The notes below the pieces were generated by a model, which saw only the letters and a list, made by a program, of their open reading frames with translations, made no database searches and was not told the origin of the DNA. 64,000 bases of DNA from Octopus sinensis (Eukaryota): positions 25,730,001 through 25,794,000 of the forward strand of contig NC_043012.1 of assembly GCF_006345805.1 (NCBI RefSeq), given 5' to 3'. The translations under genes and the position numbers were made by a program. The number at the start of each line of letters is the position of its first letter. The stretch's first letter is position 1. Positions 59,185 to 61,554 of this stretch are shown here, one piece after another.

Positions 59185-59260
<76 letters not shown>

Positions 59261-59384
59261 ATCAACAATCAAGGAACGGCCATAATAGGCCATTCACCCA
59301 CTAGAGAAATAACAGCCAAGCTTCAACCGCAAAATAACATTAATTCCGCAAACCAGGAGAAAATTAAAAAACATTTACCCTGTA

Positions 59385-59491
59385 ATTTCTTATACGATGC
59401 ACCGTTTCATCTACTGTTTAATGGTAAACTAACCTGATTAAATTAAATCAAGCCAATCTTCCATAGGCCCTTAGATTCGTCAGTAAGAAAT
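59385..59491 (-). ncRNA. Type I hammerhead ribozyme, copy 1 (complete)
   Basis: Minus-strand RNA reads AUUUCUUA-CUGACGA-AUCUA...UAGAU-GAAA-CGGUGCAUCG-UA/UAAGAAAU. Stem I is 8 bp. The core is CUGANGA at 59483-59477. Stem II closes with AUCUA/UAGAU. Stem III is ACGG/UCGU with a UGCA loop. Predicted cleavage follows the GUA triplet, between 59393 and 59392. Confidence 0.85.
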
Positions 59492-59870
59492 AGCCAGATC
59501 GGAACAGATATTTTCACGAGGCATTTCTGTCCCTGCCTCGGCAATATCTGACCTAAATTTTCAAATCATCGCACTCGCGCCAAATTTATCGGCAGCAAAT
59601 AAATATAAGCCGCCGATTCCATTACGGAATCAACCAGAAAATTCATAATTAATCAATATAGGGTGGCAAAAAATTTTGTAGAATTTTTTGCCACCAGCGG
59701 CCTAGTGGGAAAAAATTAAATAGTCAAGACCATTTATAAGTTCAACATCAACAATCAAGGAACGGCCATAATAGGCCATTCACCCACTAGAAATAACAGC
59801 CAAAGCTTCAACCGCAAAATAACATTAATTCCGCAAACCAGGAGAAAATTAAAAATCATTTACCCTGTAA

Positions 59871-59974
59871 TTCTTATACGATGCACCGTTTCATCTACTG
59901 TTTAATGGTAAACTAACCTGATTAAATTAAATCAAGCCAATCTTCCATAGGCCCTTAGATTCGTCAGTAAGAAA
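59871..59974 (-). ncRNA. Type I hammerhead ribozyme, copy 2 (complete)
   Basis: Same elements as copy 1: CUGACGA at 59967-59961, GAAA, and the GUA triplet at 59879-59877. Stem I is UUCUUA/UAAGAA. It lies 484 nt from copy 1 in direct orientation. Confidence 0.85.
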
Positions 59975-60000
59975 TAGCCAGATCGAAACAGATATTTTCA

Positions 60001-60093
60001 GAATCTAAGGGCCTATGGAAGATTGGCTTGATTTAATTTAATCAGGTTAGTTTACCATTAAACAGTAGATGAAACGGTGCATCGTATAAGAAA
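60001..60093 (+). ncRNA. 5'-truncated hammerhead (lacks the stem I 5' strand and CUGAC)
   Basis: Begins GAATCTA at the inversion junction and continues through TAGAT-GAAA-CGGTGCATCG-TA-TAAGAAA. The core is broken between C7 and G8. Confidence 0.75.
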
Positions 60094-60480
60094 TTACAGG
60101 GTAAATGTTTTTTAATTTTCTCCTGGTTTGCGGAATTAATTTTATTTTGCGGTTGAAGCTTTGGCTGTTATTTCTAGTGGGTGAATGGCCTATTATGGCC
60201 GTTCCTTGATTGTTGATGTTGAACTTATAAATGGTCTATGACTATTTAATTTTTTCCCACTAGGCCGCTGGTGGCAAAAAAATTCTACAAAATTTTTTGC
60301 CACCCTATATTGATTAATTATGAATTTTCTGGTTGATTCCGTAATGGAATCGGCGGCTTATATTTATTTGCTGCCGAAAATTTGGCGCGAGTGAGTGCGA
60401 TTGATTTGAAAATTTTAGGTCAGATATTGCCGAGGCAGGGACAGAAATGCCTCGTGAAAATATCTGTTCCGATCTGGCTA

Positions 60481-60582
60481 TTCTTACTGACGAATCTAAG
60501 GGCCTATGGAAGATTGGCTTGATTTAATTAATCAGGTTAGTTTACCATTAAACAGTAGATGAAACGGTGCATCGTATAAGAG
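60481..60582 (+). ncRNA. Type I hammerhead ribozyme, copy 3 (complete)
   Basis: TTCTTA 60481-60486, CTGACGA 60487-60493, stem II ATCTA 60494-60498 / TAGAT 60556-60560, GAAA 60561-60564, stem III, GTA 60574-60576, TAAGAG 60577-60582. Confidence 0.85.
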
Positions 60583-61554
60583 ATTACAGGGTAAATGTTT
60601 TTTAATTTTCTCCTGGTTTGCGGAATTAAGTTATTTTGCGGTTGAAGCTTGGCTGTTATTTCTAGTGGGTGAATGGCCTATTATGCCGTTCCTTGATTGT
60701 TGATGTTGAACTTATAAATGGTCTATGACTATTTAATTTTTTCCCACTAGGCCGCTGGTGGCAAAAAAATTCTACAAAATTTTTTGCCACCCTATATTGA
60801 TTAATTATATATATATATATATATGTATGTATGGAAGTGTGTATGTACATATGCGTACATCCAAGGATCATTTGGCAAATACTGGAGTTAGCGATTATTA
60901 GTCATGCAATTAGTAACTACTTAATCATTACAAACATCATCACCATCATCCTGATCATCATCACTATCCTGACCATCGTCTCCGTGTTCGTCAAGAACAG
61001 TATCAATAAGAACACCATCAGAAACAACAACAGTATGTTATTAGTGTTAATATGTTTTTCATTAATTCCATTATTCTAATAGAAGTGATACAATTGGTAA
61101 ATCGCCTTACAGTGTTTTAATTATATCCCTTTGTCATATGATCTGTTATGACGCGAACGCTACCTTTGTCTTCTCATTATATCTTGTCTAACCCCCCCAC
61201 CCCAAACCAATTAGCTATCATTTGACCCTTTTGCATTTCAACCGGATATAACAGGCCGAAATATTCTACTTGTTTTATGGTGAAGGCACCATGTCAGATG
61301 TTCTATATTGTGCAGTGGCCATATATAGTGATGGATACCATCAATTTTTTTCTTCACAATATATATCGGACATCTTGTTATTTTTGCAGTCCTTTTTATT
61401 TTTCCATTAGTCGTTTATTTATTTATTTACCAAGATTTGAAAATTCGTTGCATTTTTCACGGATTAATACATAAGTTATTCTATATTTTAGAGATGAGGA
61501 ATTCTGTACATTATTTACATTATTGACAGGGTTAGGTTCGAAATTCTACCAGGA

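What the first reader, a model, noticed from the sequence alone, without database searches (positions are those of the whole stretch)
59258..60810. Retrozyme-like element: a ~485-nt non-coding unit with a type I hammerhead ribozyme, in tandem copies
Seen in the sequence: three complete hammerhead folds (minus 59385-59491, minus 59871-59974, plus 60481-60582) and one truncated copy. All catalytic residues are intact: CUGACGA, GAAA, a purine-pyrimidine 10.1-11.1 pair, stem III ACGG/UCGU and a GUA cleavage site. A leftward transcript through the two direct copies would be cut at 59877/59876 and 59393/59392, releasing a 484-nt monomer with no ORF. Established knowledge: tandem 150-400-nt repeats with type I hammerheads in animals (retrozymes) give circRNAs and are thought to borrow Penelope-like RT. 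Inference: this is an octopus retrozyme family with an unusually long unit. I do not know of it being described, but I cannot check that.
Basis: partly seen in the sequence, partly recalled or inferred. Interest (0 to 1): 0.92.

Follow-up and report, generated by a model that had tools for sequence, protein, structure and literature searches.

The report
Octopus hammerhead-ribozyme retrozyme insertion
A 1.55-kb block of non-coding ~485-base repeats, each carrying an intact hammerhead self-cleaving RNA motif, sits inside a TA microsatellite in what is most likely Octopus sinensis and is missing from the same site in O. vulgaris; it looks like a new octopus member of the known animal "retrozyme" class, not a new kind of element.

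Summary
Three complete type I hammerhead (HHR) motifs lie at the stated coordinates and a fourth is 5'-truncated. The core is intact: CUGACGA, GAAA, A15.1-U16.1 and GUA. My strict descriptor finds only these three sites in the window, against about 0.0012 chance hits per 64 kb. Rfam Hammerhead_1 aligns over its full length but scores 16 bits against a gathering score of 34, because of a roughly 57-nt insertion in stem II.

The element spans 59258-60808. It consists of 1.5 units on the minus strand joined head-to-head to 1.7 units on the plus strand, and it is embedded in (TA)n. The window is most likely Octopus sinensis. The orthologous O. vulgaris site carries an uninterrupted (TA)n with no element.

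Partial tandems, an adjacent inverted 5'-truncated copy and a (TA)n target are the published hallmarks of Penelope-like element (PLE) integration. Animal retrozymes are thought to depend on PLEs.

The retrozyme reading is therefore supported. The claim of an "unusually long unit" is not: published retrozyme consensus lengths run from 51 to 972 bp.

Three things remain untested. No other copy could be fetched, so there is no covariation test. Cleavage and circle formation were not tested. The direction of the presence/absence difference is unresolved. Verdict: a new member of a known kind, of moderate interest.

The parts
59186..59257 (.). Left (TA)n microsatellite that abuts the element. (CA)n and (TGTA)n runs precede it from about 59105.
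   Evidence: Sequence. The same microsatellite is uninterrupted in O. vulgaris.
59258..60000 (-). Minus-orientation arm: 743 nt, about 1.53 units, a partial tandem. Its 5' end is at 60000 (unit position 373) and its 3' end is at 59258 (unit position 136).
   Evidence: It is 97% identical to the plus arm.
59871..59974 (-). Complete type I hammerhead motif (upstream copy). Predicted cleavage is between 59877 and 59876.
   Evidence: Descriptor search. Rfam Hammerhead_1 aligns over model positions 1-45 of 45 at 16 bits. The HHR fold is 2.1 kcal/mol above the MFE.
59393..59876 (-). Predicted 484-nt monomer released by the two minus-strand HHRs. GC is 37% and there is no ORF.
   Evidence: circular MFE -146.6 kcal/mol, z = -5.3, 63% of bases paired. 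The antisense strand has a similar z of -5.8.
59385..59491 (-). Complete type I hammerhead motif (downstream copy, stem I 8 bp). Predicted cleavage is between 59393 and 59392.
60001..60808 (+). Plus-orientation arm: 808 nt, about 1.67 units. Its 5' end is at 60001 (unit position 410, inside the HHR) and its 3' end is at 60808 (unit position 237, ...GATTAATTAT).
60001..60094 (+). 5'-truncated hammerhead. Stem II, GAAA, stem III and GUA (60084-60086) are present. The stem I 5' strand and CUGAC are missing, so it cannot cleave on its own.
   Evidence: Sequence; alignment.
60481..60582 (+). Complete type I hammerhead motif on the plus strand (stem I 6 bp including one G-U pair). Predicted cleavage is between 60576 and 60577.
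59662..59695 (.). Perfect 14-bp hairpin within each unit (GGTGGCAAAAAATT...AATTTTTTGCCACC). It also occurs at 60270-60304 and 60757-60791.
60809..60824 (.). Right (TA)n remnant, followed by GTATGTATGGAAGTG, which is shared with O. vulgaris.

Best explanation
This is one insertion of a non-autonomous, non-coding retroelement of the metazoan non-LTR retrozyme class in an octopus genome, most likely O. sinensis.

Shown here:
- A unit of about 485 nt carries one intact type I hammerhead motif.
- The copies form two partial tandems joined head-to-head.
- The block sits exactly inside a (TA)n microsatellite.
- The orthologous O. vulgaris site lacks the block.

Inferred:
- A leftward transcript through the minus arm folds two hammerheads. 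These cut after the GUA triplets at 59877 and 59393 and release a 484-nt RNA with 5'-OH and 2',3'-cyclic phosphate ends.
- A host RtcB-type tRNA ligase closes that RNA into a circle.
- A Penelope-like element (PLE) reverse transcriptase/GIY-YIG endonuclease nicks (TA)n and copies the circular or multimeric RNA.
- Each arm is longer than one unit, so the template was either multimeric or was read round a circle.
- The two arms point away from a blunt central junction. Their 3' ends lie in or next to UA-rich parts of the unit, against (TA)n. This fits both sides of the break priming cDNA synthesis, which would give the PLE-typical pattern of an inverted 5'-truncated copy next to a partial tandem.
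For: - Complete HHR core and three helices are present in all three full copies. The core is invariant among copies.
- The chance expectation is 0.0012 per window.
- The only Rfam ribozyme family hit in the region is Hammerhead_1, aligned end to end.
- The HHR fold lies within 2.1 kcal/mol of the MFE.
- Periodicity is 484-490 nt with one HHR per unit, no ORF and 37% GC.
- Flanks at 95-97% identity meet in an uninterrupted (TA)n in O. vulgaris, and no unit is found in 93 kb there.
- PLE hallmarks from PMC8557442 match the locus: partial tandems, an inverted 5'-truncated copy adjacent at the 5' end, and (TA)n targeting. Naiad PLEs are reported in Octopus.
- 31 recently active PLE families are reported in O. 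vulgaris (PMC13282606).
- Retrozymes are proposed as PLE dependants or derivatives (PMC7229834; bioRxiv 10.64898/2026.07.22.740005).
Against: - The Rfam score of 16 bits is below the gathering score of 34.
- No other copy could be retrieved, so there is no covariation or conservation test and no copy number.
- Stem II is atypically long, and 10.1-11.1 is A-U rather than the usual G-C.
- The plain MFE fold pairs ACGA of the core with UCGU instead of forming stem III.
- The strong folding z-score is equal on both strands. It reflects DNA-level palindromes and gives no strand-specific RNA signal.
- Without an outgroup, a deletion in O. vulgaris by recombination between the flanking (TA)n runs cannot be excluded.
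- The 30-40-bp PLE "tail" is absent, and a target-site duplication (TSD) cannot be read in a microsatellite.
- Naiads, the PLE clade reported to prefer (TA)n, lack canonical HHRs.
- Expression, cleavage and circles are untested.
Confidence: 0.72

Rival explanations
1. An ordinary tandem or foldback repeat, or another non-autonomous transposable element, in which a hammerhead-like motif arose by chance or is a dead relic. No self-cleavage or RNA circle is involved.
For: - The Rfam score is below threshold.
- At 0.0012 chance hits per 64 kb, a 2.7-Gb genome would hold about 50 chance hits.
- There is no covariation evidence.
- The MFE fold disrupts stem III.
- Structure z-scores are symmetric between strands.
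Against: - The motif falls once per unit in the only tandem element of the window, which covers 2.4% of it.
- All 11 core bases plus A15.1-U16.1 are intact in every copy.
- The termini of the block are not inverted repeats of one another, because the arms end at unit positions 136 and 237. It is therefore not a foldback transposon or MITE.
- The PLE-type architecture matches the class that carries HHRs.
Confidence: 0.13
2. A pseudo-LTR (pLTR) fragment or solo array of an autonomous Penelope-like element, rather than a separate retrozyme family. The unit would be the terminal non-coding repeat of a 3-4-kb PLE present elsewhere in the genome.
For: - PLE pLTRs carry type I HHRs and form partial tandem and inverted structures.
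- In Xenopus, retrozyme consensus sequences are sister to PLE pLTRs.
Against: - More than one full period is repeated head to tail in each arm with no ORF sequence between the repeats.
- No RT or GIY-YIG remnant was seen in the window or in L001.
- HHRs reported in PLEs are minimal variants with a very short helix III. Here helix III has 4 bp.
- The distinction is partly semantic if retrozymes derive from pLTRs.
Confidence: 0.1
3. An assembly artefact. A palindromic or chimeric long-read product, or a mis-join at (TA)n in the PacBio-based assembly, created the head-to-head block.
For: - The two arms form a near-palindrome.
- Most differences between copies are 1-nt homopolymer indels, which are typical of long-read errors.
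- The block is flanked by microsatellites.
- The assembly has a 100-N gap nearby that corresponds to about 35 kb in O. vulgaris.
Against: - The arms are asymmetric: their ends differ, the junction is blunt, and the arm lengths differ (743 nt against 808 nt).
- There are also substitutions between copies.
- Both flanks continue collinearly with O. vulgaris for kilobases.
- An artefact could explain the inversion, but not the existence of the HHR-bearing unit itself.
Confidence: 0.05

Closest known systems
Metazoan non-LTR retrozymes (Cervera & de la Pena 2020, PMC7229834; Li, Clavereau & Pollet 2026 preprint, 10.64898/2026.07.22.740005)
   Same: - One type I HHR per unit.
- Head-to-tail copies of a few hundred bp.
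- No ORF, LTR, PBS or PPT.
- Low GC (37%).
- A heavily self-paired predicted monomer.
- Co-existence with PLEs in the host.
- A mollusc host is already known (mussel, 350-390 bp). As in that mussel family, the canonical loop 1-loop 2 contacts are absent here.
   Different: - Stem II is a 67-68-nt imperfect hairpin rather than a short capped helix. The Rfam model therefore scores it below threshold.
- 10.1-11.1 is A-U.
- The locus is two partial tandems head-to-head, not a long direct array.
- Only one locus was seen.
- Expression and circles are untested.
- I found no cephalopod example described.
Penelope-like elements and their HHR-bearing pseudo-LTRs (Cervera & de la Pena 2014; Craig et al. 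2021, PMC8557442)
   Same: The insertion anatomy matches: a partial tandem, an inverted 5'-truncated copy adjacent at the 5' end, and a (TA)n microsatellite target that prevents a TSD from being read. PLEs also carry type I HHRs.
   Different: - There is no RT/GIY-YIG ORF.
- The unit is 485 nt, not 3-4 kb.
- The HHR has a 4-bp helix III, whereas the PLE HHRs are described as minimal, dimer-dependent variants.
- No 30-40-bp tail was found.
pDo500 satellite of Dolichopoda cave crickets, newt satellite 2 and Schistosoma Sm-alpha (cited in PMC7229834; the pDo500 unit size is from my memory of Rojas et al. 2000)
   Same: These are tandem non-coding repeats whose transcripts self-cleave through a type I HHR. 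pDo500 has a unit of about 500 bp, so the length here is not exceptional.
   Different: Those are large arrays of satellite type. This is a single small insertion with an empty site in a sister species.
Plant LTR retrozymes (Cervera et al. 2016, PMC4918200)
   Same: The same logic applies: a non-autonomous retroelement whose RNA is cut out by HHRs and circularised.
   Different: The plant elements have type III HHRs inside LTRs, PBS and PPT, GC above 55%, 4-bp TSDs and Gypsy-dependent mobilisation. None of these is present here.

Membership tests
Metazoan non-LTR retrozyme | Type I hammerhead with a complete catalytic core and three helices | tested here: met
   CUGACGA, GAAA, A15.1-U16.1 and GUA are present. 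Stems I, II and III have 6-8, at least 5, and 4 bp. Three copies meet this. The chance expectation is 0.0012 per window.
Metazoan non-LTR retrozyme | Head-to-tail repeats of a few hundred bp, one HHR each (150-450 bp in PMC7229834; 51-972 bp in the 2026 preprint) | tested here: met
   The period is 484-490 nt, with 1.5 and 1.7 units per arm. Only dimer-scale arrays are present, and the two arms are inverted relative to each other.
Metazoan non-LTR retrozyme | Non-coding, with no LTR, PBS or PPT, and low GC | tested here: met
   The longest ORF with a start codon is 46 aa. GC is 37%. Translations of three of the longest stop-free frames have no relatives in the protein databases.
Metazoan non-LTR retrozyme | Highly self-paired monomer RNA | tested here: met
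   Circular MFE is -146.6 kcal/mol, z = -5.3, with 63% of bases paired. The antisense strand gives z = -5.8, so this is not strand-specific.
Metazoan non-LTR retrozyme | Loop 1-loop 2 tertiary contacts of canonical type I HHRs | tested here: inconclusive
   Stem II has no short capping loop. Internal loops lie after 5 bp of stem II and after 6-8 bp of stem I. The mussel retrozyme HHRs also lack the canonical contacts.
Metazoan non-LTR retrozyme | Multi-copy dispersed family in the genome | not testable with these tools
   No octopus genome is searchable by DNA. There is no second locus in the 64-kb window or in 93 kb of O. vulgaris.
Metazoan non-LTR retrozyme | Self-cleavage, and expression as linear and circular RNA | not testable with these tools
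   This needs in vitro transcription, northern blots, or RNase R treatment with RT-PCR.
Metazoan non-LTR retrozyme | Mobility (insertion polymorphism) | tested here: met
   The site is filled in the window and empty in O. vulgaris, with boundaries exactly at the ends of the element. The direction of the change is not resolved.
Rfam RF00163 Hammerhead_1 | Covariance-model score at or above the gathering threshold (34 bits) | tested here: not met
   The score is 16 bits (E = 2.5 over 1.65 kb; 0.19 over 126 nt). All 45 model positions align, and the score is lowered by a roughly 57-nt insertion in the stem II loop.
PLE-mediated insertion | Partial tandem plus an inverted 5'-truncated copy adjacent at the 5' end | tested here: met
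   The arms are 60000->59258 and 60001->60808. Both are 5'-truncated, and they meet at a blunt head-to-head junction.
PLE-mediated insertion | Microsatellite target, (TA)n for Naiads | tested here: met
   (TA)n lies on both sides of the element. The O. vulgaris site has an uninterrupted (TA)n.
PLE-mediated insertion | A 30-40-bp tail at one end | tested here: not met
   Both ends pass directly from unit sequence into (TA)n.
PLE-mediated insertion | A PLE partner whose termini are homologous to the unit | not testable with these tools
   No PLE fragment was seen in the window or L001, and no octopus genome is searchable. The literature reports active PLEs in O. vulgaris.

The most novel reading that the evidence does not exclude
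The locus may be a fresh, readable footprint of how retrozymes move. Under this reading it is a lineage-specific insertion, filled in O. sinensis and empty in O. vulgaris. Both ends of a (TA)n break primed cDNA synthesis on a circular or multimeric hammerhead RNA. Each arm is longer than one unit, and the arms meet head-to-head at a blunt junction. That would be the first locus-level evidence that PLE machinery mobilises retrozyme RNA, and the first in cephalopods. It would also involve an HHR variant whose stem II is a 67-68-nt arm that curated models miss. A side effect is that the roughly 700-bp inverted arms would form long dsRNA if read through. This could matter in an animal with heavy A-to-I editing.
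Probability: 0.4. Interest if true: 0.55.

Novelty: new member of a known kind. Interest (0 to 1): 0.36.

Why it matters
- If confirmed, it extends retrozymes to cephalopods.
- It shows that hammerheads with a long stem II escape the Rfam threshold, so genome surveys may undercount them.
- The filled and empty sites in sister species, together with the PLE-type architecture, give a concrete locus for testing the proposal that PLEs mobilise retrozyme RNA.
- It does not change the picture of what retrozymes are.

Tried and rejected
1. Fetching other copies through spurious ORFs.
- Four exact look-ups of in-unit ORFs found nothing.
- Two word-indexed protein searches, with the 61-aa sense and 62-aa antisense frames, found nothing.
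- One full HMMER scan with the 69-aa antisense frame gave one spurious hit at 23% identity.

2. Exact DNA patterns.
- A 22-mer from the HHR gave 0 hits in metagenome, viral and prokaryote contigs.
- A 20-mer gave 5 metagenome hits (L002-L006) with no similarity beyond 20-23 nt, so they are chance matches.

3. Looking for a PLE partner.
- No RT or GIY-YIG remnant was seen in the six-frame translations of the window or L001.
- No supplementary sequences are held for the PLE paper.

4. Strand asymmetry of folding as evidence for a functional RNA polarity. Rejected: the sense strand folds 41 kcal/mol better, but both strands have z of about -5 to -6 against their own shuffles. The difference comes from G+U composition.

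5. The microRNA and sRNA Rfam hits in the region (MIR7504, mir-4662 and others). They are products of the long inverted repeat, all lie far below their gathering scores, and were rejected.

6. A relaxed HHR-like hit at 17798-17913(+). It has a 3-bp stem II. About 0.04 such hits are expected per window, so it was treated as chance.

7. The O. sinensis orthologous record could not be fetched, because the gene range is too long.
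Full report
**What is there**

The block 59258-60808 contains about 3.2 copies of a non-coding unit of roughly 485 nt. One arm runs leftward from 60000 to 59258 (743 nt, 1.53 units). The other runs rightward from 60001 to 60808 (808 nt, 1.67 units). They meet head-to-head at a blunt junction, 60000|60001. No other copy exists in the 64-kb window.

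Each full unit carries one type I hammerhead motif. The three complete motifs are at 59974-59871(-), 59491-59385(-) and 60481-60582(+). The plus arm begins inside a fourth motif, at GAAUCUAAGG, so that copy lacks the stem I 5' strand and CUGAC.

In RNA terms the motif reads 5'-AUUUCUUA CUGACGA [AUCUA...long hairpin...UAGAU] GAA ACGG UGCA UCGU A^UAAGAAAU-3'. The cleavage sites (59877/59876 and 59393/59392) and the 484-nt monomer are correct.

**Is it more than chance?**

- My strict descriptor required stem I of at least 5 bp, CUGANGA, stem II of at least 4 bp, GAAA, an A15.1-U16.1-led stem III of at least 4 bp, a non-G residue at position 17, and loops up to 100 nt. It finds exactly these three sites in the window.
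- It gave 8 hits in 6600 simulated 64-kb windows, or 0.0012 per window. That would still mean about 50 chance hits in a 2.7-Gb genome, so the motif alone is not proof.
- Rfam at gathering thresholds finds nothing in the window. With relaxed thresholds the only ribozyme family hit is Hammerhead_1. It aligns over all 45 model positions but scores 16 bits against a gathering score of 34, because stem II carries a roughly 57-nt insertion.
- The plain MFE fold forms stems I and II but pairs ACGA of the core with UCGU. The hammerhead fold lies only 2.1 kcal/mol higher.
- The four copies are 97-100% identical, and the core is invariant. Most differences are 1-nt homopolymer indels. This is too little variation to test covariation.

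**Organism and the empty site**

The exon at 45916-46557(-) is identical to an Octopus sinensis collagen-like protein up to the splice site. The window is therefore most likely O. sinensis.

The O. vulgaris gene model for the orthologous gene gave a 93-kb locus, L001 (OX597828.1:22591224-22684220). It is collinear with window 29182-63920. Window 57518-59242 aligns to L001 28713-26974, and window 60806-63126 aligns to L001 27000-24644, at 95-97% identity. The two alignments meet in an uninterrupted (TA)n.

The element is absent there, and no unit occurs anywhere in L001. The block is therefore a discrete presence/absence unit whose boundaries are exactly the ends of the repeat, embedded in (TA)n.

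I could not get an outgroup. Insertion in the O. sinensis lineage is the more economical reading, but deletion between the flanking (TA)n runs in O. vulgaris is not excluded.

**Architecture and mechanism**

Craig et al. (PMC8557442) describe Penelope-like element insertions in these terms:
- partial tandems;
- a bias for microsatellites, (TA)n for Naiads, which hides target-site duplications.

They also report Naiads in Octopus. A 2026 repeat annotation lists 31 recently active PLE families in O. vulgaris (PMC13282606). Cervera & de la Pena (PMC7229834) proposed PLEs as the mobilisers of animal retrozymes. A 2026 preprint places retrozyme consensus sequences as sisters of PLE pseudo-LTRs.

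The locus shows all three anatomical hallmarks. Both arms are 5'-truncated, at unit positions 373 and 410. Their 3' ends, at positions 136 and 237, lie in or next to UA-rich stretches of the unit and abut (TA)n. Each arm exceeds one unit, so the template was multimeric or circular.

My reading is as follows. Steps (a) to (c) are inferred; only the outcome in (d) is observed.
- (a) Sense transcripts self-cleave at the HHRs.
- (b) The 484-nt monomer is ligated into a circle by a host tRNA ligase, as shown for other retrozymes.
- (c) A PLE RT/EN copies it into (TA)n from both sides of the break.
- (d) The two cDNAs are joined head-to-head.

At this locus only a leftward transcript can release a monomer. 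The plus arm has one complete HHR.

In the O. vulgaris gene model the site lies in an intron of a gene on the window's minus strand. In the O. sinensis model it lies 12.7 kb upstream of the first coding exon.

**What weakens the case**

- The Rfam threshold is not met.
- Stem II is unusually long, and 10.1-11.1 is A-U.
- There is no second locus, copy number or covariation.
- There are no expression data.
- The strong folding z-score of the monomer (-5.3) is matched by the antisense strand (-5.8). It reflects palindromes in the DNA and says nothing about which strand is functional.
- The PLE tail is absent.
- The PLE clade known to prefer (TA)n lacks canonical HHRs.
- The near-palindromic block could in part be a long-read assembly artefact. 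However, the arms are asymmetric and differ by substitutions, and both flanks are collinear with O. vulgaris.

**Comparison with what is known**

The element behaves like, and meets the testable criteria of, a metazoan non-LTR retrozyme:
- a type I HHR;
- head-to-tail copies of a few hundred bp;
- no coding capacity;
- low GC;
- a self-paired monomer;
- mobility;
- a host that carries PLEs.

The length is not unusual. Published consensus lengths reach 972 bp, and from memory a cricket HHR satellite has a unit of about 500 bp. A mollusc example (mussel) is already published.

I found no paper that describes hammerheads or retrozymes in cephalopods.

**Verdict**

The retrozyme interpretation is supported in its main line, and it is strengthened by the empty site and the PLE-type anatomy. 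The "unusually long" and "family" claims are not supported. It is a new member of a known kind, and interest is moderate (0.36). My confidence in the best explanation is 0.72.

Noticed in passing
window 44434-44533: A run of exactly 100 N marks an assembly gap. Between window 44070 and 44627 the O. vulgaris locus holds about 35 kb (L001 43146-78166). The gap therefore probably hides a large missing or misplaced segment.
   Followed up: partly
window 23759-24150, 50806-51182, 56841-57230 (also about 9423-9773): An interspersed repeat of about 390 bp, SINE-like and often next to microsatellites. It has several copies in the window and at least 4 in L001, at 84-88% identity. Its translations recur as ...RRASFSFRLPNPLTRLWSA....
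   Followed up: no
window 169-514, 22609-23141: A second interspersed repeat of about 400 bp. It matches L001 66232-66645 and 8464-8762 at 83-89% identity.
   Followed up: no
window 51428-52118 (-): A GC-rich ORF with a CCHC zinc-knuckle-like stretch (CHSCLESGHIKNDCP). It looks like a retroelement gag/ORF1 rather than a host exon, and a longer version is open in O. vulgaris L001. It was not scanned against Pfam.
   Followed up: no
window 8452-8793 (+), 53527-53820 (-), 4853-5188 (-); L001 74252-74620 (-), 88038-88271 (+): Short stop-free stretches that look like decayed non-LTR retrotransposon ORF2 or reverse-transcriptase tails. They are not PLE-like. No GIY-YIG motif was found.
   Followed up: partly
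window 45916-46557 (-), 39106-39294 (-): Exons of a collagen-like type II membrane protein (O. sinensis P0001, Pfam collagen). The O. vulgaris model P0004 joins them to different upstream exons, so the two annotations disagree about the 5' end of the gene.
   Followed up: partly
window 17798-17913 (+): A weak hammerhead-like match that appears only under the relaxed descriptor (stem I 4 bp, stem II 3 bp). About 0.04 such matches are expected per window, so it is probably chance.
   Followed up: partly
window 59258-59962 and 60001-60707: The two arms form an inverted repeat of about 705 nt at 97% identity, with a 38-nt spacer. Read-through transcription would give a long hairpin dsRNA. This accounts for the spurious microRNA-family hits and could be a substrate for editing or small-RNA pathways.
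   Followed up: no
window 41100-41650, 48250-50650: Long trinucleotide and low-complexity arrays that give open frames in several phases. They are not genes.
   Followed up: no
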